From Salisapilia sapeloensis CBS 127946 (Eukaryota > Protista > Oomycota): a stretch of 64,000 nt of DNA. Shown piece after piece: positions 33,225-58,938 of this stretch (positions within the stretch are counted from its first letter, which is position 1; each line of letters begins with the position of its first letter). The stretch spans positions 1-64,000 of the forward strand of contig JAADVB010000075.1 in the NCBI GenBank assembly GCA_023334545.1. The letters run 5' to 3'. Below the pieces are notes generated by a model. That model was not told where the DNA came from. It did not search any database and saw only the letters and a program-made list of their open reading frames with translations. The position numbers were made by a program, and so were the translations under genes.

Positions 33225-34557
33225 GTAGGCGTTTGAACTTGGCATGACATTAAATGATTGGAATCTTCTCGTTGGTACAGACAAGTACTGCTGGTTGGTA
33301 TTTTACCTAGTCTTATGTGGCAGGATCTTCGTCTGAAAGGTAGAAGGCTGTATGATGGCAAAATCGCTGGTAAAAGATGGCATGCTGTGAGCTACAGCCT
33401 TCACAAGTTCTTTTACTTCGAATCACTTTCAATTCGGAGTTTCAGCCAAAATGCTCAAATGTTCGTCGCTATGCTACTAGAGTTGGAATGAACAACAAAA
33501 CCATGTCTTGGTGATATCTGTTATCACTGTCTTACATGGAAAAAGGCAATATGATATAGAATTAAGAAGTCCGTGTTCGTCGAGCGGATAATCGGGTTTT
33601 ATGCAAGGAATGATTAGCATTGTGTCAACAAACACAGATGAAATATAATTGGAATGAAGGCCTACATCTTTGGTGTCGGCCTATTCTTACGTTGCTATCC
33701 ACCTTTCTATTCCTGTTTATGTAAATCTTCCGCTCTTCCGGCATGTATTGACGGGTAACAGTGTCGAGCGTATCATCGGAAGCCCTTCAGGTTGAAGTGT
33801 CATTCGATTTACTTGCAACATTGAGCTCTTCGCCATTTTATTAGGACATAGTACAGTGTGAGACATATATCGATCAATTATTCCGTCTAGCACTGTACAT
33901 TCCCTGTTCCGAAATAATAGCGAAGAGCTCACTAGCGCAAGTAAAGCGAAGAGCTCACCAAGCCTTTTGCGCGCTTTTTCAAATTTGCACACGTCGAGAC
34001 CCAAGCATGCCTTGAAGTCTTCTCGAAGATGGTTTCCTCTTGGTTGCATCCAAGGCGATAACAGACATAAACCAGGAATATGAATTCGCATCTCCATTGG
34101 CAGTACAGAACACTCACTTATGCATTCGATATAGTGGGAGAAAGATCTATTGAAGTTTTGTGTTAGGTTTCCATAGCATGTAGCTACTCTGAATCGCCAA
34201 TTCTCAGCGAACACATAGCTATCCGATTCGATTGTCAAGAATAGAACTACATAAGGCGAATCGCCAATCATGCTGAGTCGGATGCGGGGTTTGAAGCGCT
34301 TTGAAAGAAGTAGGCAAAGCTTGGACCGTGTTGGCGCTGAATGCCAATCTCGACATCAAAAACGATGAACCTTTTGATCAGACACACCCCACTTTCGCAT
34401 CCGATACCTCTATCCCTCTCCAGCGTACTCGAGTCTGACAACGACCACATCAACTACATGTCCAAGACATATGCAACAACTTCCAACTAGTTTAAATCCT
34501 CCATAAAATACCACCTCCTCGAAACTCGTGCAATACCAAGTACTCGCCTACTTAGTC

Positions 34558-45648: not shown

Positions 45649-47976
45649 CTACACACTTGGCCTCGCCATCCACGACTCATACAGCGGCTGATGAGCGCCT
45701 CGTGGATGCATCAGATGCAGCGTCTCGTGCTTCTCCACATGCATCGGCAGGCCAAGAGGTTTCCAAATGTGCGTCGAGGATCTCCGCATGCCACACACCT
45801 GCGCCACGACCTTCTCCAGCTCCTGCTCCGTCAGGTGCGCGCCTAGCTGTACCATGGCAACGTCGTGCTTGGCGGCAGCGACGTAGCGTAAGATGCCTCT
45901 CTCGAGCAGGTACTCGACGGCCTGCTTCATGGTCTCGCTGCACAGGGCTTCTGCGTGCTGGAGCTGGTGGGAAGACAGGAGAGCCTTGGCCAGGAGCTGC
46001 GTCTGCCGAACGAGGTCGCCGACAGACATGTTGTCTATCGAGTGGGAAGCCATCGGTCGTAGGCTCTGGAGACACAGCCAGAGGGAGTCTACCAGCGGCC
46101 ACGAGAGCGCCAAGATGAAGCTAACGAGTCTGCTCTTGCGCCACTTGTTCAGTCGGACGAGGACGAAGGAGTGGCTTGAGTAAGCATTCCCAAAGACGTC
46201 TGGGCAGTGCGTCTGGAGCTGCTCTAGTCTGTCTGCCAAGTCGACGTCCTGGTGGTGACAGAGGTGGCGGAGGTAGGTCCAGAAGGAAGAGGCTTTGTGC
46301 AATAGAGAGCTGGTGGATATGCTGACCTGGTCCTGCGTGAAGATGGTGGAGACGTGGTCTGGCAGGTGTCTCTGGAGGAGGATCGAGTGGATGGCCGTGA
46401 CAATCGCCATGTCGGGTAGAAAGGCATGCAGAAGCTGGTTTCGGTAGAAGTTGAGCACGAGCGCTTGCGTCGGAGAGCCCAGGTGACTCTGTACGACGCC
46501 ATTGGACTGCACTGGCACCTTGAGCACCGACAGGGCGTGGTCTACCACCTCGTCACTCGAGACGTTGCTGACGTTTACCTGTCTCTCTTCTAGTTCCTGC
46601 AGCAGCCACTGGCAGGAGGAGTGAATCATGTCTTTCGTGGCATACGCCCTCCTCCACATGAGGACAGAGGAGACGACCGAGGTGCTCGTGATGGTCCCCG
46701 TCTCTTGCATCCGGACGCCCAGCGTCTTGGCAGTCTCGAGCAAGTTGAACCTAGCGTCCAGAGCGAGAGGCTGTCCGAAGCGGACGTAGGCGTGTCCGCA
46801 GCGGAGGAAGAAGATGCTCCAGATGGACTTGAGCAGCCCTAGCAGAGTCTCCGGCGCCTTTGGCTTCCCCAGCACCTGGGCAGCATAGTCCTCCACCTCG
46901 AGCACCTTGTCGTAGTCGAGCGAAATGGGGACAAGAAGCATCTTTCGCCCTCTTGCATTCTCGTTGGACGTAGGAAGATACCTCTGCAAGAGAGACAGAA
47001 AGCCCATGCGCAGCTGATGCACTCGGCCGGAGCGAGACCGACCTCCTTCCAGAAACACCTCGATCGGATTCCCGTCCGCCATCAGCTCGTGCACGTACGT
47101 GTCCAAGACGTCCTTGTAGAGCTGGTCGTCTCGGAAGGACCGACGCATGAAGAAGCTCCCGTTGGCTCGCAGGAAGCGCCCAACCAGAGGCAAGTCGAGG
47201 TTGTTCCCGGCCGCGATGCGAGGGAGAGGAATGCCGTAGCCAAAGCACAGGTAGCTCACGATCAGATAGTCCAGGTGTGTCTTGTGCGTAGGACAGAAGA
47301 CGACGCACGTGCCGTCGTCCGCCTGCTCCAGAGCTTCCTGTAGGCCACGCAAAGAACCTGCATCGACGTGCAGGCCGTCGAACAAGAGTCGCCATGTCTT
47401 CGTCAGGATGTACCCCAGGCATCGTACAGCCGGTAGGAGCATATCCGACCGCAGAGCCTTTAGAATCTTGGAGACTCGGGCAGGCTCTCGACCGAGTCTG
47501 GCCTGCACCTGCTCCTCGTGCCGAGATGGAGACGACGGACGGTGGCCATGCAAATTGTACTCACATCCGCCACGGAGGCTAAAGACAACGTCCTGAAGCA
47601 ATCGGCGGACGTCGATGCAGCTAGGACTATCCAAAGTCTGGCGCTTGGCGGCGCATCGTCTCCGAGAGCCAACGGACGCCAGAAGCCACGAGGTCTGCAT
47701 GACGTCCACCATGTCTGTCGCTTTCAAATGCTCTCCACTGTGACAAGTAGCACAAGTGCCGCTGCTGCAGAGACTCATGGGCGTCGAGAGCTCCGTGTCG
47801 TCGTCGTCGTCGCCACCGGCGAGCTCTCGTCGGCCCTCGCCCATCTTCTGGTGGTCTCCTTTTCCCCACATTGCCACATCTTTGAAGTTGCCTCTCTCCA
47901 CCCGATGCCATCGACCGCCACTGCGATCTTGAAAGGGAGCGTCACGCCGCGACGAGCGACCGGTCTCACCTGCCAT
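45649..47976 (-). CDS. Glycerol-3-phosphate/DHAP acyltransferase (PlsB/GPAM/GNPAT family)
   Basis: Acyltransferase blocks PTHKTHLDY (HX4D), FFMRR, FLEGGRSRSG and LVPISLDYDK. True start uncertain. Confidence 0.92.
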   Translation of the reverse strand: MAGETGRSSRRDAPFQDRSGGRWHRVERGNFKDVAMWGKGDHQKMGEGRRELAGGDDDDDTELSTPMSLCSSGTCATCHSGEHLKATDMVDVMQTSWLLASVGSRRRCAAKRQTLDSPSCIDVRRLLQDVVFSLRGGCEYNLHGHRPSSPSRHEEQVQARLGREPARVSKILKALRSDMLLPAVRCLGYILTKTWRLLFDGLHVDAGSLRGLQEALEQADDGTCVVFCPTHKTHLDYLIVSYLCFGYGIPLPRIAAGNNLDLPLVGRFLRANGSFFMRRSFRDDQLYKDVLDTYVHELMADGNPIEVFLEGGRSRSGRVHQLRMGFLSLLQRYLPTSNENARGRKMLLVPISLDYDKVLEVEDYAAQVLGKPKAPETLLGLLKSIWSIFFLRCGHAYVRFGQPLALDARFNLLETAKTLGVRMQETGTITSTSVVSSVLMWRRAYATKDMIHSSCQWLLQELEERQVNVSNVSSDEVVDHALSVLKVPVQSNGVVQSHLGSPTQALVLNFYRNQLLHAFLPDMAIVTAIHSILLQRHLPDHVSTIFTQDQVSISTSSLLHKASSFWTYLRHLCHHQDVDLADRLEQLQTHCPDVFGNAYSSHSFVLVRLNKWRKSRLVSFILALSWPLVDSLWLCLQSLRPMASHSIDNMSVGDLVRQTQLLAKALLSSHQLQHAEALCSETMKQAVEYLLERGILRYVAAAKHDVAMVQLGAHLTEQELEKVVAQVCGMRRSSTHIWKPLGLPMHVEKHETLHLMHPRGAHQPLYESWMARPSV

Positions 47977-48404: not shown

Positions 48405-50056
48405 ATGACGCCCGTTACAGACCTTCCGGATTCGGTGCAGACGCCCAGGACGCCCATCCAGCCGAGCTCCGGCAAGAAGCGGCGGAGGCGGACCGCTGCC
48501 CAGATCGACCGCAAGTTCAAATGCCAAGTCCATGGGTGCTCGAAGGTATTCTTCTTCTACCCCCATAACTCCCTCTCTTCTCACGACACCATTGACGACG
48601 CAGGCGTACGGGTCCGAAGGCTCTCTTAAGCAGCACGTCAAGCTCAAGCACGATGGAAAGCCAGATACGAGGACGACGCCCAAGACCCTCAAAGTCACGC
48701 CCGTACGTTGAGACGCTCCCTCTTATCTTTCACATTCACATGACGCTCATGTGTGCATAGCAAGTGCAGACGGATGCCATGCACAACCTCTCGAGCCACC
48801 ACGCCTTCCATCTCTTCTCGGCTACACCGTCCGGCACGCGCAATGTCACCATCCGACCAGCCACGCACAGTCCAAGTCTAGGCCACGAGCCCTCGCCCCA
48901 CTCGACGCCCACCACGCCTCCTGCCTTCCCACCCGCCTCCTGGCCTGGCACAGTCCACTTTGCTCTGACTAGTGTAGCAGAACCTTTGAATGGTACAACC
49001 CTTGGCCATCGTGCTCGGTCCTACTCGATGCCATCCTCCCCGCCAAGTGTGTTTCATCATGTTCCACTGATAGTACTCGATAGTCTCATACTCTATGCTC
49101 TAGGTACCTACACGCCCACTGCGAAAAGCCATGCTGAACCACGCAGCCGAGCTGTCCGATCCAGCAAGACCAGTGCCACGCCACGGCCAAAGGGTAAGTC
49201 GTATCGTTTGAAAACACGGTCCCAGTCAGACTCCGTGTCGGATCCACATGCGTTCGACCTTCCGTCGGAGCTGTCGGAGCAACTGTGCAGTTTCAGTGAC
49301 GACCCAGACCTCAGTCCCTGGGATGTCGACGCCCCTATCATGATCTCGTCTCCCTCCGATGCCGTCTCTCGAGAGCACAGCCGATCGCTCGACTGGACAA
49401 TGTCCGGAGCCAGTCTCACACCAGACGAAGAGGTCTTTGACAAGGACATTCTGTCCGTTCTGGCCACATGTGAAGCAGAAGACTCCTCTTCAGAGCGTGC
49501 TTCTACGAAAGAAGAGCCATGTGAGTCTCTTTGGGACTCATCCATCGCGTCAGACAATATTGACGTCTTCATGTCGGAAACCCTCTCGACGGGCTTGATG
49601 GAGACGGCTCACTTGACCAGCGTCATCACGCCGACGGTGGATGTCGACATCAAGGCCCCTTGGATGGTACCCAACGAGCTCTCTTTGCCCACTCTCCCGT
49701 CTTCTTCTAACCCGTCCACCTTCCTCTTTTCCGAAGACCACTTGAAAGACGCTAGTTGGAAACATACAGCTCAAACTACATGTCCAGTGCCACTTTCAAC
49801 CAGTATGAACGGACCGGACGAGGAAATGCCAGCCATTGCCGAAGACAAACCCTTCTTCACCAAGGAAGGCTTCAAGCTAGATGCAATGGCGTGGGATCAT
49901 GACAGACGCCCCTCCAGCAGCTCCACGCGTGACAGCAAGCAGATTGACTCGGCTATTAGCAATGTGCTCGACATGGATCTGAACGATGACACGGCTGGTC
50001 CATCCAGTGATACGGAGAACTCTTGCCCTTTCGCAGACATATTATTATACGATTGA
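48405..50056 (+). CDS. C2H2 zinc-finger transcription factor, multi-exon
   Basis: KKRRRRTAAQIDRKFKCQVHGCSK/AYGSEGSLKQHVKLKH after splicing, followed by a long Ser/Pro/Asp-rich activation-like region. Confidence 0.8.
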
Positions 50057-53000
50057 GAGTGCTAGCTCCATGCGCTCATGTGCAGCCACTGCATACATGT
50101 CAACCACCACTGTGCGAATCACAAGAGAGCTTTTTATGTCTGGCAGTTGGAACCTTTATCTTTGTATCTGTCTCAATCTACTCTTGTATCAGTTACACAC
50201 CATGGCGTGATCTCTTGTGTGTCTACCGTTTTACAATTAAAAAGCTGGATATATGTAATTCCGAGCAAGCATTAAAAGTTTGTTGTTGTTGCAAAGGGCT
50301 AAAAGTTTATTAAGCAAGCTTATATTAGAAGACGACGTCCTTTGGAGTCCACTGAAGGTGGCCTCTACCATTCCGAAAAATGGGATGCTGGTTGCTCAGT
50401 ACATTCGGAGCCCTTGGACTGGAGAACTGCCATAAGCGCGTTTCAGAGCTGACGCTTCCGATACGGCAGTTCCTTGATTTTCGTTTTTTGGAGTCCGTTT
50501 TGAAGCGAGCAAACACTAGCACTGGCAAGAGGGCACGTATACTTTACTCACTGACGTTTATAAGTAGTGCAGACTCTATTTTGTCAATATATTCAACTAC
50601 TGGGCCTACCATAAAGTTTCATAATATTGAAGAGGAAAGTTTGTGGTATATCCGTTACGTGGTTCTTGAATCTATGTAGCAATCGCTAATATCCATCACC
50701 TTATTAGATACATCGTAAACGACAACAACCAGTTATTAATCGAATGTTGGTTGCCCTCGAAGACGGTTGCCGTAGCTCAAGCAGACCCTGGCACAATTAA
50801 CGTAAAATTTATTATCATGGGCAACGTGTAGGAATAAAAGAGTTGAAATAAAATATGGTAAAACAGTCATTTGTTGATGGTTTGCATCACTCGCGCATTA
50901 GACGATTATCCTTACATTAGAGGGCGGTATTCAATCTGTTTGTAGACTGCATACTTTTGCACGAGTCATAACTATGGCACTGGTGCAGCTTCTTTTAAAA
51001 TCATGAAATAAACCTGTCGCGTATGATTTTAAATCTAATTCCTCTAGTCGAAACAGGGAAAGTATGTTTGGAACGCTTGGGAATGCTTAGGAGAGCACTG
51101 AGGGGTAGAAGTTACGGTGATGTCGGATAACTCCGAGGCAGGACAAACGTGGTTGACTTCATGTTCATGTACACTGGGCCGCTGCACAGGTCGAACGTAG
51201 ATAGCCAAGTGTGATCATAGATCCTATAGTACAGGGAGATATTAGCAAGTGGTCTCGCGTGCGCGTGCGTTCGACAGTGAAAATGGACGTACTTCGAGGT
51301 GGCACAGTAGTCGTCGATTTGCAACAGCGAAGCTTAGTAGAGCTGCAAGATGATGTGTTCGGGACTTATCTTGGAAAATGAGTGATGATTTATAATCATA
51401 CCGCACCCTTCTACGCAACAATTCGCATTTGGTCTCATTGTGCAAATTTATGAGGCGTACAAACTTACAGCCACAGTTTTTCATGCTATCAACGAGACAG
51501 CATCGTTTGACCGTCTAACGAGCCCTAAAGTAATGATAGATAGAAGAAGTCAGAACAGTTTTATGACCGAAGAAGAATCACACTCAAGCGAGCTCAAGCA
51601 CCTACTGCACAAAGCGTCCCGTAAATTCATTTAACTAAGCACATAAGACTGTAGTTCTTAGCTATGGATCGAAGAACCTTCTGTACAAAGTGCACGGAAG
51701 ACAGAAGTACCCATCATAGAAATTTGTAGCTGTTACACGAGTTACAGAGACATCAAATGCATATATAGAAGTCAATACGGTTGCAGCTGGGCTTTATACC
51801 GTACTGTCATAGTATAGAACGCAACCATACCCAATCAATGGCTTGACAGTTGACTGCACTTCTCTAGCACTAAAAATAGCTTTGTAAGTAAGTTTTTTCG
51901 TATCTATTTTGTGGATAAAGTTATTTTTAAACGGTAAAATACTTTAGTCCAAAACCTTCTGTCCAAAGCAGTACAGACTTGTAACACTATTTTCATGAGG
52001 CAGTATAAACTTACTAAACCCAATTGTTAATTAACCGCAGATATTGTACATATATCAACTAAATCTCATATTAAATCACAATAAAAATAAAACTTTGTGC
52101 TAGTGTAAACAACTTTTCTATAAGAACTTCATCTTGCATGCATCATATGCATTTCCTAGTTATAAATATGTATGAGAAAATTTATTAAAACATGCAAAAT
52201 TTAGACACATTACTTAAAATAAAGCAAATGATATGTTAAACAAAGTAACGTCAAATTAAAAAAAGGGAAATTGAAAAGAAGACAAATAAGTTCCAAAAAC
52301 AAGTTTTGACATATACGCAAATACTTTTAAAATTTACAGCAAACAAAATTTTTAGCTCTATAAACGAATTAAACGCAAGATCTAAACAAACAGATTGTTT
52401 GTGTTTGCATTTGGTAAGATTTTAGTCTGTATAAAAAATGAATTTTTTATTGTTTTATATCTGACGTAGCGACCACATAAGCAAAGTTTTTATATTAATT
52501 TTGTTTTACAAATGCATTGATATTTAACATGACATGAATTAAATTGTGTGTAGAGCAAATTTTTATATAAAAATCGTATAATTTTACACACAGTTAATTT
52601 AACCAAAATTAATGCAAACTGAAGTATCAGATTGAAAACACAAAAAACAATTTGTATTAAAAACTATAAACAACTTCAAATAAAAACACAAGTTACTTTA
52701 ACGTACAAAAACAAGCTAAATAAGACTTTACAATGTATAAAATTTTTGTATCAAAGCTATTGTTTCGTAAAAAATCATATATTTTAACTTTAGAAAAAAT
52801 ACAAATACAACGTTGTAGGTATTTTGTTAAAGGTGAATAAAAATTACTCTAAATACGATAACAAATAGACTATACATAACATAATTATTAAGGCACTTAA
52901 CAACATAACAAAAGTTAATAAAAACTAGAAATTACATGAAGACAGTATGTTTTGAATCAAACATTGTATTTTTGTATTCAAAGCCCTCTATCTATCACTA

Positions 53001-56000
53001 AGCAATTTTACAATTACTTTTTAATACAATGTAAAGAATAGATCCAACTACTGTTTTAATTAAACAAAATTTGTGACTTTGCATGATGCTTATAACTATT
53101 TATATATCGTATCATCTATTCATCATACATAAACAGTTGTAGAAAGTGCTTTTCTGAATAACCTTTAACATTTAGTGTTTCTTAAAAACCTTTGTGATAT
53201 ATTGTATATAAACATTACAACAAATTTATTTATATTAAATATTATCCTTAGCCTAAATTCATTAAAAACTTTAATAAAAATTGTAGAGCTTACGTAATAA
53301 ATTTGGAAATTATTCATTGTATCCAAAAATTATTTTTTACATATATTGTAGCGTACAGCAAACATCTCATGTTCAAATTTTTTCTCTTAAATTCCTCTAT
53401 GAATGCGCTTTATAAATATGCAGAACACTATGGACGACAACAACGTATAATGAATGTGTCAAAAAGTTTACATTAATAGCAGAAAACCGTCTGTAAAGAG
53501 TATATTTTTAAATCATAAAAAGACAGTAAAAAATACTTGTAGGCTTGTCCACCGCTACATGTGTATTATATTGTTATGAAAAAAAAATTATCATGCTATT
53601 ATCATATTTGATTATATAGTCAAGCACTACAATGTTTTATATATTTAATTAAATTTATCATGATATCGATTCCTGAAAGCATAAAACAAAAAAGGCAAAT
53701 TTGGAGGAAACTACTTTAAACTTAAATAATACTTAATCTTTTTAACTTTAGTTTTATGACTTAAAAATTATGTTTATGTATAAAAGAAAAGTTTGTATAC
53801 ATTGTTGTAATATTTTATATGTGAGCAATAAAAGATCGATTTTTTTATTATATCTGACATTGAATGTAGAAAAGATTTTCTCTTTATCTATACATTTAAT
53901 GTTATATACCTTTTTTACATTTTTATTATTTTAAAAGATACATAATAAATAAGTTCGTTCGTTTAATTTCTATAATTATTAAATGATATTATTTAGCAGC
54001 ATACAGACACTAACCTGTTTAATTTTAAAATTTATAAGTTTATATTTGAGATTTCTTACTAATAGTGATATTGAGATTTGTACTTTGAGTACTAGTTTTC
54101 AATATGTTTTGGTTAAATATTGTTCTTAACGTAAGTGTTATGCTCCTTATAGCATTAATTTAATTATCTAGTCAGTTTATAGTATTTAAAACATAAAAAA
54201 CTTGTGAGAATATATAATATATATTCAATGGTAGTTTATATACTTGTTTTAGCACAAAAGTTTTATTTTCAAATGATAAGTACATGCTATTTTTTTGTTA
54301 ATAGTTTGAAGCTGTGTGTTTAAATGTTATCTCCATATAAGGAAGAAACCTTATCAATCTCAATATTAAGTTTTTTATTTTTTTTATAGTACAAAATGTG
54401 TATTAAACTTATATTTTTTCACGTAAAATAATAAATCTGCTAAAAAAAAATTGCATACAAAGAAGCGTTCTTTGTTGTCGTTATTTTCTAGCTGATCTAT
54501 ATGTGCTAAGTGTTATAATATCACATGTTTGTCATAGCCTAATATGAAATGTTTTTTTTGGTCTAGCTTTTTTTAACTTTGTATAAGAATATCTATTTAT
54601 GAAAATTTTCTAAAAACTTTACAACGCAGTTTATACGATTTCGACATTTTTATTTAAGCAAACAAAGAATACTTTGTAGAAAAACACGTTGATTGCTTAT
54701 ATTTATTACTGTTGAAAGAAAATACAACATTTTATAAATATAGATAGTCTATTTGACTAAATAATTACAGTTGACATTTTAGGCGTTGAGAAAACGCACT
54801 AAAATTTTGTAAATTTGTAGCTGTCGAAAAATTTTGCTCCGTATCAATTTGTAAAGGATACACAAGCAGCGTTAGGTTTAATTTAGGTTCGTCCAAACAG
54901 AGGTCTGGATATTTGACAAGCTTAAGCTCAATTGAATACAGTGTATTTTTACTCATATCTTTACATTCGTTGTTGTAAAATATGTTCTCTTATATTCATG
55001 CAGTATCTATCTTTTTAATGCTTATTGTGCAACTAAGTGTGTTCATTTCGTAGCACAAGACGACCAAATCGACGTAGGAACACGTCGAAGGAACTACACT
55101 CTTACACAATTTGCTGTTTAAATCATGTTATTACAATCTGCAATTGATGTGTTGACAGTATTTTTGATTACCAAGGCGCTGGCGAAATCAAATTCAATGC
55201 ACGAGTACATCATTCTAGAGTACGTTTGTGTTCATTATAAACTCTGTCAATAATGAGGCGACATTTCGCTAGTATTAAGGCAGCAGATATCTGTTATGCA
55301 TGCAAGCGACACTAAGACAGTATCATCTAGAGCAATGTACGTTCTGTTCAAATGTCTTGATTCAAATGCTTTTTATAGTCAACGTGTCTGACAATGGTCT
55401 TGACTGTAAACAATACAATTGGCTTGTGGTCATGAGTAGATAGTTTGATTTAGCGAATGCTGTCGTCTTCTGTAATTCAAAACAGTGTCAGAATGCGGTG
55501 ATTACTCGCTCGGATTCGTATCTGCAACGGCAAACAACATTGCCAGATGAAGCATATCCGTCACCTACATTCTGATAGTCTGACAGTAATCCTATCTCTT
55601 ACATCGATGTACCACAAAGAGTATCCTTTAATATTCGTGAACACTAATATTAATGTAGTCTTAATGCTGTATTTCACAGCGTGCAGAGATTTGAAGAGTC
55701 GATGTATATTTAGCGTTGATACCAAACCTGCTAAAGCACTCTACTTCAGCTGCAATCGCTAGAGTTGATAGACGCCAAAAACTGTATTTATATGCTGGAT
55801 AAAACTTGCTTTAGAAATTGTTCATACAACAGTCGTTGATGTCGTGTGCTTACATTTGAACCACCGTGATCGTTCGCTAATTACTTTGACAGGTACTGCA
55901 ACCTTTTCTAGGCTTACTAATTAATCAGCAAGGTTAAGCAGCTCTTCAATTGCCGCTACGCGCGATATTGAGCTTAAATAGGTTAGTAAGCTCACAAATT

Positions 56001-56993
56001 CAATTCTGTTATATACTTCATCATGTTGAATCCCGGAGGTCTCTATCCTACAACATCATCTAGGACGAGTACTCCTACCAGCTTAGTGCGTGCTCTCTAT
56101 TTTGTACTTGCACTGAGATCGTGTTGGCGAAAGTTTATATAAGCAGTTTTCGAGCATCATCTTTTTGCTGCATTTGTCTATACGTGGTACAATTCAGGAA
56201 AAATCTACCTATACACACCTAGCAATATGTTTGACATTGAATAATGTGCTCAATCGTAGTGTGCCATCAACACAATGCTTGCAAACGCATAGCGATCCGG
56301 CGTTTTTAAAGGTAGGTCTTTTACCTTTGCTTGATAGCATGCGGATTTTGCTTTCACATATTATGGAGCTTTAGTTTGGCTTCTCGATTCGGCGAGCTGG
56401 TTTTCCTTTAGTTGTGCGATTGCTTTTGCATTCGATTGTGCCAAGTTGCAGGAAGAAAGGTATTATTAAAGGTATAAGTTATAATGAGAGTAAATGCCAT
56501 GCGACTATAATAGAATTGCGTGCCTGTTGACAGTGGTTGGTCGTCAAAGTCGTAGAACCAAGGACTACATGCTGCACCCAACCGACGTATGAATTAAAAG
56601 CACTAGGCAGCTCTTGGTACGATAGCAAGCATAGACAAGGTAACTTTTGTGGGTATAGTACACCATGTCACCACCATTACACAGAAATAGGCGCAAAAGT
56701 CACTTGGATGAACGCTGCGGTTAAGCATAAAGCAAGACAGCACAAAGATTACATGTACCGTCACTCGAGTCTGGTAATCTAGCTCTCACCTTTACATACA
56801 ATGCTCTACTTCAGACTTTCCGAATCAGATGCATCAAATTCAAGCAGCCATTTATACCAATCAAAACGCTTGAAAAGGCTCTTATAATCTTGCAGTCTCT
56901 AATAAATACGTCAATTAAGGCAAACGACCCTACATTCCATAGAAACACTGCTATTCCTACGAAGAAGATTGCGCCTAAAACAAGCGTTTTAAC
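50057..56993. other. Gene-free 6.9-kb interval with an AT-rich core (about 51.9-54.9 kb)
   Basis: No credible ORF. Sampled 60-mers contain 13/60 GC (52201), 8/60 (53881) and 13/60 (53641), versus 30/60 in the adjacent CDS (57301). Confidence 0.85.
50994..51033. repeat. 11-bp perfect inverted repeat with an 18-nt spacer
   Basis: TTTAAAATCAT (50994-51004) and ATGATTTTAAA (51023-51033). Confidence 0.6.
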
Positions 56994-58076
56994 ATGACCG
57001 AGATCGGATCGTTCCTGCCGACGACCTCATCCTCCGCCCCTCGCAACCCGTACGCCCGTCATACGAAGAGCGCAGGCCAAACTCCGTCGTCCAAGGTCGT
57101 GCTGGGTGTTATCGCAGCCTTCACAGTCGGATGTGTCGTTTTGTGGAGAACCTCTTCGATGCCATCGATGACGTCGATGACCACGGACTCCAAGGTCGCT
57201 GTGCCTCGGTTCAAAGGAGCTTCGGCAGTCGATCCGCACCAACTAGGTATCATGACCTTCAACCTCCGTTTTGCAGGTGCAAATGACGGACATAATGGAT
57301 GGAGATACCGAAAGGATCACGTGGCAAATATCATCAATCGGTACCATCCGGCCATCATGGGGACGCAGGAGGGACTGAAGGATCAGCTAGCAGACCTCCA
57401 CGACCTCCTCTCTCACCCATATGAGCGGTACGGTATCGAGCGAGAGACGAACGGAGAGTTCGAACAGATCTTCTACGACACAAGTGTCGTCGAGTGGCTC
57501 GACGGAGGGAACTTTTGGCTCTCGGACTCACCCGACACTCCAGGCACTAAAGGATGGGATGCAGCCTGCGTTAGATTGGTAACCTGGTGCAAGTTCCGAC
57601 TGCATGCGACCGGCCAGGAGCTCTTCTTTTTCAACACGCAGCTGGATCACGAAGGCGCTAGGGCGAGAACCATGGGCTCCCAGCTGCTCCACGAGCGCAT
57701 GCAGGAGATCGCTGGCGCCGACTCGGCTGTCTTCCTCGTCGGTGACTTTAACACGTACCGTCACACGAGTACCTACAGCTACTTGACGGCAGCCAAGGAA
57801 GGTCCGAAGCTGTTGGAGGCGTGGCCTGAAGCAGAGAACCAGATCGGAGACGTGTCGTACACATATCATGGGTGGGCCGGCATACAGAATGACGGGGAGA
57901 AGACTGCGAAACGCGCTGCGAACCACATCGACTGGATCTTGTATCGTCCCAAGATGAGAGTTCTGTCAACGGAAGTGATCACGGAGTCTCGGAATAGTCG
58001 GTATCCGTCGGACCACTATCCAATCCATGCTGAGGTCATGTTTCCACCGGTTACACAAGTAGCTCCGTCGTCGTAG
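56994..58076 (+). CDS. Endonuclease/exonuclease/phosphatase (EEP) family hydrolase with N-terminal TM anchor, intronless
   Basis: TM VVLGVIAAFTVGCVVLW, then IMTFNL, GTQEG, GNFWLS, GDFN, IDWI and YPSDHYP. Confidence 0.92.
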   Translation: MTEIGSFLPTTSSSAPRNPYARHTKSAGQTPSSKVVLGVIAAFTVGCVVLWRTSSMPSMTSMTTDSKVAVPRFKGASAVDPHQLGIMTFNLRFAGANDGHNGWRYRKDHVANIINRYHPAIMGTQEGLKDQLADLHDLLSHPYERYGIERETNGEFEQIFYDTSVVEWLDGGNFWLSDSPDTPGTKGWDAACVRLVTWCKFRLHATGQELFFFNTQLDHEGARARTMGSQLLHERMQEIAGADSAVFLVGDFNTYRHTSTYSYLTAAKEGPKLLEAWPEAENQIGDVSYTYHGWAGIQNDGEKTAKRAANHIDWILYRPKMRVLSTEVITESRNSRYPSDHYPIHAEVMFPPVTQVAPSS

Positions 58077-58122: not shown

Positions 58123-58938
58123 ATGAGCTCCCTGCGGATCATGACGTTTAACCTGCGCTTTGACACGCCACAGGATGGACGGAACCAGTGGGGGCATCGA
58201 CGAGAGCACGTGACAGAGGTCATCGAGCGGTATCATCCGCTCTGCTTCGGGACACAGGAGGGACTAGTCAACCAGCTGGAAGATTTGACACGGTCTCTCC
58301 AGCATCCGTACGAGCGATTCGGAGCGCCTCGGGAGCCCAACTCGGAGCATCAGCAGATCTTCTTTGACACAGACTTTCTGGAAAAGATCGATGGGGACAC
58401 CTTCTGGCTGTCGGACACGCCAGAGAAAGCCGGCACCAAAGGCTGGGATGCGAAGCATGTACGAGTCGCGACGTGGTGCCACCTCCGTCTGATCGCCACT
58501 GGACACGAGTTCTTCCTCTGCAACACCCAGCTCGATCATATCGGACAAGTCGCTCGATTGGAAGGAGCCAAGCTCATTGCGTCCAAGATGAACGCGATAG
58601 CAGGAGGGAAGACGCTCTTTATCATCGGAGACTTTAACACGTACCGAGACTCGGACGTCTATCGCTTCTTAACGAAAGACACTACCGGTCCAAAGCTGTT
58701 TGATGCATGGACAGAGACTGATGAGCAGATTGGCGACGTCTCGTGCAGCTTCCACGGATGGGAAGGTGTCGATGGACCGCATGAAAAGGGTGAAAACAAG
58801 GGCGAGCGCCACATTGACTGGATCCTCTTCCGGCCGAAGATGCAGGTGCTGTCGACGGAAGTTATTACAGAGCATAGAGACGGTCGCTATCCGTCGGACC
58901 ACTATCCGATCCAAGCGGAAATCGATCTGGACGAGTAA
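58123..58938 (+). CDS. EEP family hydrolase, soluble tandem paralog, intronless
   Basis: IMTFNL, GTQEG, TFWLS, GDFN, IDWI and YPSDHYP. Colinear with copy 1 but lacking the N-terminal extension. Confidence 0.92.
   Translation: MSSLRIMTFNLRFDTPQDGRNQWGHRREHVTEVIERYHPLCFGTQEGLVNQLEDLTRSLQHPYERFGAPREPNSEHQQIFFDTDFLEKIDGDTFWLSDTPEKAGTKGWDAKHVRVATWCHLRLIATGHEFFLCNTQLDHIGQVARLEGAKLIASKMNAIAGGKTLFIIGDFNTYRDSDVYRFLTKDTTGPKLFDAWTETDEQIGDVSCSFHGWEGVDGPHEKGENKGERHIDWILFRPKMQVLSTEVITEHRDGRYPSDHYPIQAEIDLDE

What the first reader, a model, noticed from the sequence alone, without database searches (positions are those of the whole stretch)
50057..56993. V-shaped GC trough in a 6.9-kb gene desert: candidate compact regional centromere
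Seen: genes elsewhere are often only 8-150 bp apart, yet this interval has no credible gene. GC falls gradually from about 50% in the flanking CDS to about 35% near 51.0 kb and 13-22% in the 52-54.7 kb core, then climbs back to about 40-47% by 55.5 kb. Known: few-kb low-GC troughs mark centromeres in diatoms, Plasmodium and several yeasts, whereas described Phytophthora centromeres are very large and Copia-rich. Inference: this may be a short, repeat-free, diatom-like centromere in an oomycete-like genome. Alternatives are a heavily decayed transposon or an old NUMT.
Basis: partly seen in the sequence, partly recalled or inferred. Interest (0 to 1): 0.75.

Follow-up and report, generated by a model that had tools for sequence, protein, structure and literature searches.

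The report
Short AT-rich candidate centromere, oomycete
A unique, gene-free 6.9-kb gap with a 3-kb very AT-rich core in a compact water-mould genome is one of roughly twenty look-alike islands and is most likely a small centromere, unlike the huge transposon-filled centromeres known in other oomycetes, but no kinetochore data exist to prove it.

Summary
Window 50057-56993 has no stop-free frame above 107 codons, while 78% of the rest of the window is covered by long frames. It contains a sharply bounded 2,950-bp core (51867-54816) at 23.5% GC. The shoulders are about 40% GC and the rest of the window is 52.5%. The desert is single-copy and repeat-free. It has no Pfam, Rfam or tRNA signal and no transposon or mitochondrial remnant.

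The genome is a deep-branching oomycete (22.4 Mb, 1365 contigs). I confirmed seven further islands by sequence. All eight are 2.3-3.3 kb and 23-27% GC, with no shared sequence or motif. A genome-wide census of A/T runs suggests about 15-22 islands, roughly one per Mb.

Five of six complete islands, this one included, switch from A/C-rich to T/G-rich at the centre. That is the polarity of a constitutive replication origin, as at Candida and Yarrowia centromeres.

The best reading (about 0.55) is a small, composition-defined regional centromere of the diatom / Cyanidioschyzon / Malassezia kind.

Caveats:
- The assembly is too fragmented to test one island per chromosome.
- Unassembled Copia-rich centromeres cannot be excluded.
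- There is no CENP-A data.

The scan had already reached the same reading on other islands of this genome.

The parts
45649..47976 (-). GPAT gene. It is the last gene of the conserved block DHHC - Methyltransf_5 - GPAT on the left of the desert.
   Evidence: Pfam PF19277 and PF01553. Orthologues are 46-48% identical in Pythium, Globisporangium and Phytophthora. Microsynteny with L022 and L023.
48764..50056 (+). Left flanking ORF (430 codons, Ser/Pro-rich, no Pfam family). Its 3' end faces the desert. It occupies the position where other oomycetes have the NIPA gene.
   Evidence: NIPA is the neighbour of GPAT in relatives.
50057..51866 (.). Left shoulder: non-coding, 42.4% GC.
   Evidence: No Pfam hit in its ORFs.
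50280..50448 (.). Short dispersed repeat inside the left shoulder. Five other copies in the genome are 74-86% identical over 60-110 bp.
   Evidence: C581, C662, C850, C525, C966. (L020 against the window).
51867..54816 (.). AT-rich core, 2,950 bp at 23.5% GC. This is the candidate centromere core. It is unique in the genome, with no repeats and no ORF above 57 codons.
53564..54063 (.). GC minimum (19% over 500 bp) containing the strand-skew switch point at about 53732, where A/C-rich on the left changes to T/G-rich on the right.
54817..56993 (.). Right shoulder: non-coding, 39.0% GC.
56994..58076 (+). Right flanking gene, endonuclease/exonuclease/phosphatase family. It is the first of two tandem paralogues, and its 5' end faces the desert.
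   Evidence: Pfam PF03372. Translation.

Best explanation
The 2.95-kb AT-rich core is most likely the kinetochore-forming core of a small regional centromere of one chromosome of this compact oomycete. On this reading the centromere is defined by base composition and chromatin state, not by a sequence motif. The ~2-kb gene-free shoulders would act as a pericentric buffer.

Inferred mechanism:
1. CENP-A nucleosomes replace H3 on the AT-rich core, and CENP-C and the outer kinetochore assemble there.
2. A replication origin fires constitutively at the centre of the core. Over evolutionary time this produces the mirror-image strand bias.
3. The lack of crossing-over and of GC-biased gene conversion at the kinetochore, together with an AT-biased mutation spectrum, drives and maintains the low GC content.

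What is shown: the anatomy, the uniqueness of the sequence, the existence of a class of look-alike islands, the skew polarity, and the presence of H3-variant-like and CENP-C-like genes. What is inferred: kinetochore binding, origin activity and the cause of the AT-richness.
For: 1. This is the only deep trough in 64 kb and the largest gene-free gap.
2. By the diatom criterion of Diner et al. (bioRxiv 10.1101/096016: at least ten 100-bp windows of 32% GC or less in 3 kb), 55 of 59 windows qualify in 52001-55000 and none elsewhere in the window.
3. The sequence is single-copy in the genome. It has no tandem or inverted repeats, no Pfam hit, and no Rfam or tRNA hit.
4. It belongs to a class. Eight islands were confirmed by sequence (C1089, C269, C519, C590, C631, C678, C1122, C1213). 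They are 2.3-3.3 kb and 23.3-26.5% GC, with ~40% GC shoulders, no similarity to each other and no shared motif beyond A/T tracts.
5. The census of A/T runs of at least 20 bp finds about 205 runs. Twelve nuclear loci have at least 3 runs within 3 kb. The estimate is 15-22 islands in 22.4 Mb, about one per Mb. That is far too sparse for ordinary replication origins and is in the range of oomycete chromosome numbers.
6. Five of six complete islands show a central switch from A/C-rich to T/G-rich, always with the same polarity, which is the origin polarity. This matches the centromere-linked skew of Candida, Clavispora and Yarrowia (PMC2924309).
7. The assembly is transposon-poor: 3 Copia RT hits and 10 integrase hits, none on this contig.
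8. A divergent H3-like gene and a CENP-C cupin match are present.
9. The island lies at a synteny break. The GPAT-NIPA pair is conserved in Pythium, Globisporangium, Phytophthora and Peronospora, but here it is split and NIPA lies on contig C545.
Against: 1. There are no CENP-A, Hi-C or replication data.
2. All oomycete centromeres described so far are 100-300 kb, Copia-rich and of average GC (PMC7082073, PMC11139960).
3. The assembly has 1365 contigs and no telomere repeats. One island per chromosome is therefore untestable, and repeat-rich centromeres could simply be missing. The few Copia and integrase hits sit on short contigs that look like collapsed repeats.
4. The island count is an extrapolation. 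Only 8 islands were seen as sequence.
5. The magnitude of the skew is not exceptional: genic control segments reach z = 4.7. One island, C519, lacks the switch.
6. No close relative is available to test conservation of position.
Confidence: 0.55

Rival explanations
1. The islands are not centromeres. They are another kind of composition-defined chromosomal element, such as a constitutive early replication origin, a scaffold or matrix attachment site, or a chromatin boundary. The true centromeres would be Copia-rich arrays, as in Phytophthora and Pythium, that failed to assemble.
For: The mirror skew has origin polarity. Every oomycete examined so far has CoLT-rich centromeres (PMC7082073, PMC11139960, bioRxiv 10.1101/2021.09.14.460278). 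The Copia and integrase hits lie on short contigs, as collapsed repeats would, including one intact 1726-codon element on C881. The assembly is fragmentary and lacks telomeres.
Against: About one island per Mb is 10-30 times too sparse for a genome's set of replication origins. A discrete class of fixed size (2.3-3.3 kb) and fixed GC (23-27%), each inside a 6-9 kb gene-free gap in an otherwise packed genome, is the known signature of small centromeres. Origin activity and centromere identity coincide in yeasts (PMC2924309), so an origin is not really an alternative. Only 3 Copia RT hits were found in 22.4 Mb.
Confidence: 0.25
2. The core is the relic of an inserted foreign or mobile sequence: a transposon, a viral insert, or mitochondrial DNA (which is 12-32% GC in this organism). 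Mutation would have erased it beyond recognition, perhaps through a C-to-T hypermutation process.
For: The GC content of the core equals that of the mitochondrial fragment C952. CC and TC dinucleotides are depleted (observed/expected 0.63 and 0.72-0.85) while GC is enriched (1.5). The island interrupts a gene pair that is conserved in other oomycetes.
Against: No ORF exceeds 57 codons. There is no Pfam, Rfam or tRNA hit, no match to the mitochondrial fragment or to anything else in the genome, no cox1-like remnant anywhere in the assembly, and no LTR or TIR. The eight islands share size and composition but no sequence, which independent insertions would not produce. The dinucleotide bias is mild and is also present in the right shoulder. 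An old relic should drift towards the ~45% GC of ordinary non-coding DNA rather than hold 23.5% with sharp edges.
Confidence: 0.1
3. The feature is an assembly artefact or contaminant DNA joined into an oomycete contig.
For: AT-rich islands often lie at contig ends (C631, C878, C1213, C1228). Around C519 and C100 the assembly shows haplotype-like duplicates.
Against: This island is internal to a contig of at least 64 kb. It has oomycete genes on both sides and graded shoulders. Four other islands (C269, C590, C678, C1122) are likewise internal.
Confidence: 0.03

Closest known systems
Diatom centromeres (Phaeodactylum tricornutum; Diner et al. 2017, read as bioRxiv 10.1101/096016)
   Same: The host is a stramenopile. 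The elements are a few kb long, non-repetitive and unique in sequence, with no shared motif, and are defined by low GC. The published low-GC window criterion is met many times over.
   Different: Diatom troughs are shallow and are not visible with windows of 0.5-10 kb. Here the core is a deep 3-kb block at 23.5% GC with sharp edges and gene-free shoulders. A mirror strand skew is present here, and I did not see one described in the diatom passages I read. Diatom centromeres are backed by CENP-A ChIP and episome assays, and nothing comparable exists here.
Malassezia short regional centromeres (PMC7025860), and the GC-poor-trough centromeres of Clavispora lusitaniae and Yarrowia lipolytica (PMC2924309)
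   Same: The genomes are compact and GC-rich. The centromere is a 3-5 kb kinetochore region around an AT-rich core of about 78% AT at the chromosomal GC minimum, with no repeats. In the yeasts there is a centromere-linked AT/GC skew switch of origin polarity.
   Different: The Malassezia core is under 1 kb and enriched for a 12-bp motif. Here the core is about 3 kb and no motif beyond A/T tracts is enriched. These organisms are fungi, not stramenopiles.
Cyanidioschyzon merolae and Plasmodium centromeres (as summarised in bioRxiv 10.1101/096016)
   Same: They are 2-4 kb AT-rich, sequence-unique regions, one per chromosome, in compact genomes.
   Different: Plasmodium cores are under 3% GC in an already AT-rich genome. 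The contrast here is 23.5% against 52.5%. The lineages are unrelated.
Phytophthora sojae-type oomycete centromeres (PMC7082073, PMC11139960)
   Same: The same class of organism. They are gene-poor and poorly transcribed, and lie at synteny breakpoints.
   Different: They are 115-270+ kb, repetitive, rich in Copia-like transposons, and 52-58% GC like the rest of the genome. None of these features is present here.

Membership tests
Short non-repetitive AT-rich regional centromere (diatom / C. merolae / Malassezia kind) | A few-kb region of strongly reduced GC at the local or chromosomal GC minimum (Diner criterion: at least ten 100-bp windows of 32% GC or less within 3 kb). | tested here: met
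   55 of 59 windows qualify in 52001-55000 and none elsewhere in the 64 kb. The core is 2,950 bp at 23.5% GC.
Short non-repetitive AT-rich regional centromere (diatom / C. merolae / Malassezia kind) | Sequence that is unique and non-repetitive, with no similarity between the centromeres of different chromosomes. | tested here: met
   The region is single-copy in G000. No tandem or inverted repeats. No similarity among 8 islands apart from one allelic pair. No shared motif.
Short non-repetitive AT-rich regional centromere (diatom / C. merolae / Malassezia kind) | Free of genes. | tested here: met
   The longest stop-free frame is 107 codons. No Pfam, Rfam or tRNA hit. Transcription could not be tested.
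Short non-repetitive AT-rich regional centromere (diatom / C. merolae / Malassezia kind) | Exactly one per chromosome. | tested here: inconclusive
   About 15-22 islands are estimated in 22.4 Mb, and no contig has two well-separated clusters. However, contigs are at most about 200 kb and no telomeres are assembled, so the chromosome number is unknown.
Short non-repetitive AT-rich regional centromere (diatom / C. merolae / Malassezia kind) | Bound by CENP-A and kinetochore proteins, and depleted of H3. | not testable with these tools
   Only the genes could be sought. There is a divergent H3-like match at C136:43.6-44.0 kb and a CENP-C cupin match at C1011.
Centromere-linked constitutive replication origin (Candida / Clavispora / Yarrowia, PMC2924309) | AT and GC skews of opposite sign switch together at the centre, with G and T enriched on the leading strand. 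| tested here: met
   The left half is A/C-rich and the right half is T/G-rich, with the switch at about 53732 inside the GC minimum. Five of six complete islands have the same polarity. The magnitude is comparable to genic controls.
Centromere-linked constitutive replication origin (Candida / Clavispora / Yarrowia, PMC2924309) | Earliest replication in S phase. | not testable with these tools
   No replication-timing data.
Phytophthora-type transposon-rich oomycete centromere | 100-300 kb repetitive region enriched in Copia-like (CoLT) elements, with GC like the genome average. | tested here: not met
   The gap is 6.9 kb, unique and 23.5-42% GC. There is no RVT_2 or rve hit on C1089, and only 3 and 10 in the whole assembly.
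NUMT (nuclear copy of mitochondrial DNA) | Detectable homology to mitochondrial genes, rRNAs or tRNAs. | tested here: not met
   No Rfam or tRNA hit. No Pfam hit. No match to the mitochondrial fragment C952. No cox1-like sequence in the assembly. The complete mitochondrial genome was not available.
Decayed transposon | Remnants of RT, integrase or transposase; terminal repeats; related copies elsewhere. | tested here: not met
   The only repeated piece is a 60-170 bp element in the left shoulder.

The most novel reading that the evidence does not exclude
A deep-branching, compact oomycete has replaced, or never had, the large Copia-rich centromeres of Phytophthora and Pythium. Instead it has ~3-kb, composition-defined, sequence-unique AT-rich centromeres that also act as constitutive replication origins. 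Such cores could serve directly as CEN/ARS modules for the first stable episomes or artificial chromosomes in oomycetes.
Probability: 0.5. Interest if true: 0.8.

Novelty: new member of a known kind. Interest (0 to 1): 0.6.

Why it matters
Oomycete centromeres are known only as 100-300 kb transposon arrays. That picture has been used to argue that oomycetes diverged from the short, simple centromeres of diatoms and apicomplexans.

A 3-kb AT-rich centromere in an oomycete would have three consequences:
- It would show that centromere architecture shifts within the class and tracks genome compaction.
- It would give an anchor for reconstructing the karyotype of this lineage.
- It would provide a compact candidate CEN/origin module for episomal vectors. 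I know of no stable episomal vector for oomycete genetics (my own knowledge, not checked here).

The claim can be tested directly with one CENP-A ChIP-seq or one long-read plus Hi-C assembly.

Tried and rejected
1. Telomere count as a proxy for chromosome number. (TTTAGGG)8 and (TTTAGGG)3 gave no match in the assembly, so the island-to-telomere ratio could not be computed.
2. Fetching all candidate islands. The census therefore rests on the coordinates of A/T runs for most loci.
3. 30-mers of A/T with up to 2 mismatches (2363 positions). These do not separate islands from isolated A/T runs and were dropped as a counting tool.
4. NUMT test against the organism's own mitochondrial genome. The assembly lacks cox1 and holds only a fragment, C952, with nad11 and nad1. 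The test is therefore partial.
5. Positional homology with known centromeres. The GPAT orthologue lies mid-chromosome in Peronospora effusa (1.45 of 3.02 Mb) and P. ramorum (2.98 of 6.42 Mb). Its 10-kb flanks there are ordinary genes, and the centromere coordinates of those assemblies are not in the text I could read. No conclusion was drawn.
6. Shared motif search across eight islands (k = 8, 10, 12 against a first-order Markov null). Only A/T tracts are mildly enriched.
7. A second AT patch at the start of contig C519 looked like two islands on one contig. Contig C100 is an 89%-identical inverted duplicate of the intervening sequence, so this is probably a haplotype or assembly join. I did not count it.
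8. Weak Pfam hits in desert ORFs (zf-CCCH, BING4CT, CC_CDK5RAP2; E = 0.06-0.15, far below the cut-offs) were dismissed as chance.
Full report
**Observation**

The trough is real. In 1-kb windows the window runs at 45-60% GC, except at 50-57 kb, where it falls to 41%, then 23-25% at 52-55 kb, then 38-41%. With 500-bp windows, GC below 30% occurs only at 51760-55089. The minimum is 19% (53564-54063), and the median of the window is 52%.

A three-segment likelihood fit gives a core of 2,950 bp (51867-54816) at 23.5% GC. The shoulders are 42.4% and 39.0%, and the rest of the window is 52.5%. The lowest 100-bp window is 13%.

The interval 50057-56993 has no stop-free frame above 107 codons, while such frames (at least 100 codons) cover 78% of the window. 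It is by far the largest gap: 6.9 kb, against 2.8 kb for the next.

The shape is a sharply bounded block on ~40% GC shoulders, not a smooth V.

**What the desert does not contain**

- No Rfam family at E up to 1, and no tRNA.
- No Pfam family in any of the ten largest ORFs of the shoulders or the ten largest of the core, beyond chance hits far below cut-off. The largest core ORF is 57 codons.
- No tandem array, LTR or terminal inverted repeat.
- No second copy in the genome. The core and the whole 6.9 kb are single-copy in the 22.4-Mb assembly. The exception is a 60-170 bp dispersed element at 50280-50448 in the left shoulder.

**Organism and neighbourhood**

The window is contig C1089:1-64000 of a 22.4-Mb, 1365-contig assembly.

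The GPAT gene left of the desert is 46-48% identical to orthologues in Globisporangium, Pythium, Phytophthora and Lagenidium. It is 42% identical to Albugo and 35-39% identical to Saprolegniales. This is an oomycete on the peronosporalean side, but far from every sequenced genus. A dynein-assembly factor gene (DNAAF5) in the window fits a flagellate life stage.

The block Ank-DHHC / Methyltransf_5 / GPAT is syntenic with P. oligandrum and G. splendens. In Pythium, Globisporangium, P. ramorum and Peronospora effusa, GPAT is always paired head-to-head with a NIPA magnesium-transporter gene. Here that position is taken by a Ser/Pro-rich ORF followed by the desert, and the NIPA orthologue lies on another contig, C545.

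The island therefore sits at a synteny break. This is weakly in line with the reported role of oomycete centromeres in fusions and fissions (PMC11139960), but it is also what a random rearrangement would give.

**A class of islands**

A pattern search for A/T runs of at least 24 bp found 64 runs genome-wide. I fetched 20 of those loci.

- Six held a deep island. C269, C519, C590 and C678 are internal to their contigs, C631 is at a contig end, and C159 is a 1.46-kb contig.
- C159 is 96% identical to part of the C631 island, so it is an allelic copy.
- The other 13 loci are gene-bearing 38-49% GC regions with an isolated A/T run.

A complete listing of runs of at least 20 bp found about 205 runs. 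Clusters of at least three runs within 3 kb occur at twelve nuclear loci: C519, C631, C678, C754, C863, C878, C1089, C1122, C1189, C1213 (continuing the end of C1322), C1228 and C1289. C952 also clusters, but it is a mitochondrial fragment encoding nad11 and nad1.

Two of the predicted clusters, C1122 and C1213, were then seen as sequence, and both are deep islands. Two-run loci were islands in one of three cases checked. Allowing for this, and for islands with a single run such as C590, I estimate 15-22 islands, roughly one per Mb. This agrees with the 'about twenty' noted by an earlier agent of this scan, which I only partly re-derived.

The eight islands seen as sequence are 2.3-3.3 kb and 23.3-26.5% GC. 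Those with fetched flanks have 1-4 kb shoulders of about 40% GC. They share no sequence and no motif beyond a mild excess of A/T tracts.

**Strand skew**

In this island the left part is A- and C-rich and the right part is T- and G-rich. The cumulative (A+C)-(T+G) curve peaks at window position 53732, inside the GC minimum.

Five of six complete islands show the same central switch. The polarity is the same in all five, and polarity does not depend on contig orientation. C519 does not show the switch, and the partial islands C1122 and C1213 are compatible with it.

With G and T enriched on the leading strand, this is the polarity of a bidirectional origin at the centre. Koren et al. described the same pattern for the regional centromeres of C. 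albicans, C. lusitaniae and Y. lipolytica (PMC2924309).

The size of the skew is not exceptional, because genic control segments reach z = 4.7 through coding-strand bias. What counts is that the same pattern recurs in non-coding islands.

**Dinucleotides**

CC (0.63) and TC/GA (0.72-0.85) are depleted and GC is enriched (1.5). CpG is neutral (0.96). The right shoulder shows the same bias. This reproduces the 'C after pyrimidine' depletion noted by earlier readers. It is mild, so I read it as the local mutation spectrum and not as a repeat-directed mutator.

**Rivals**

- *Transposon relic.* This has no support: no RT, integrase, terminal repeats or copies. The assembly as a whole has only 3 Copia RT matches and 10 integrase matches, none on this contig.
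- *NUMT.* The mitochondrial fragment has the same GC content, but there is no homology to it, no mitochondrial gene or RNA remnant, and no cox1-like sequence anywhere. Independent insertions would not give a class of equal size. The test is partial because most of the mitochondrial genome is absent from the assembly.
- *Origin only.* One island per Mb is far too sparse for the genome's origins, and origin and centromere coincide in the yeast precedents.
- *Hidden Copia centromeres.* This is the serious caveat. The Copia and integrase hits sit on short contigs that may be collapsed repeats, so Copia-rich centromeres of the Phytophthora type (PMC7082073, PMC11139960, bioRxiv 10.1101/2021.09.14.460278) could be missing from the assembly. 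In that case the islands would need another role.

**Comparison with known systems**

The island passes the published diatom low-GC criterion many times over (bioRxiv 10.1101/096016). In depth and contrast it resembles Malassezia cores even more closely: 78% AT in a GC-rich compact genome, within a 3-5 kb kinetochore region (PMC7025860). It also resembles the 2-3 kb low-GC centromeres of C. merolae.

It fails every defining feature of the described oomycete centromeres. Three full-text searches found no report of short AT-rich centromeres in any oomycete.

The genome has three canonical H3 genes, a divergent H3-like match (C136) and a CENP-C cupin match (C1011). A CENP-A-based kinetochore is therefore plausible.

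**Verdict**

The most likely identity is a small, composition-defined regional centromere with a built-in origin, at confidence about 0.55. It is one member of a class that this scan has already flagged on other contigs of the same genome.

It would be a new member of the known kind 'short AT-rich regional centromere', in a lineage where only the opposite architecture is known. Proof needs CENP-A mapping or a chromosome-level assembly.

Noticed in passing
window:50280-50448: A short dispersed repeat. Five other copies (C581, C662, C850, C525, C966) are 74-86% identical over 60-110 bp. It could be a MITE-like element or a conserved UTR element. It is the only repeated piece of the desert.
   Followed up: partly
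G000:C952:1-5200 (L038, L043): A very AT-rich contig (12-32% GC) with long ORFs for nad11 (NuoG-like) and nad1. It is a mitochondrial fragment left in the assembly, while cox1 is absent from the assembly. An identical 21-mer occurs in inverted orientation at 119 and 5153.
   Followed up: partly
G000:C159 against C631:691-2142, and C100 against C519:2870-4220: Small contigs that are 96% and 89% identical to parts of AT islands or their flanks. These are probably alternative haplotypes. If so, allelic divergence in and around the islands is 4-11%, and AT islands tend to break the assembly.
   Followed up: partly
window:33629-34262 (also window:289-409), L007:5120-5799, L015:6073-6514: A sequence family of about 400-650 bp that is 73-77% identical between this window and contigs C456 and C534. 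It overlaps a 184-codon ORF (33717-34271, minus strand) in a locally GC-poor (45%) stretch. It was not identified.
   Followed up: no
window:56994-58076 and 58123-58938: Two tandem endonuclease/exonuclease/phosphatase-family genes lie directly right of the desert. The first has an N-terminal hydrophobic segment.
   Followed up: no
G000:C881:1772-4543: An apparently intact Copia-type element (rve plus RVT_2 in one 1726-codon open frame) on a short contig. Its copy number would bear on whether Copia-rich centromeres are hidden from the assembly.
   Followed up: no
L005-L020 (for example C662, C563, C645, C523): Many gene-bearing regions of this genome run at 38-47% GC over at least 10 kb, well below the 52% of this window. 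The base composition of coding DNA is therefore heterogeneous across contigs.
   Followed up: no
G000:C136:43601-43993 and C1011:12026-12115: A divergent two-exon H3-like match (84 bits, against 164 for canonical H3) and a CENP-C cupin match. These are candidate CenH3 and CENP-C genes for tagging. The sequences could not be fetched.
   Followed up: no
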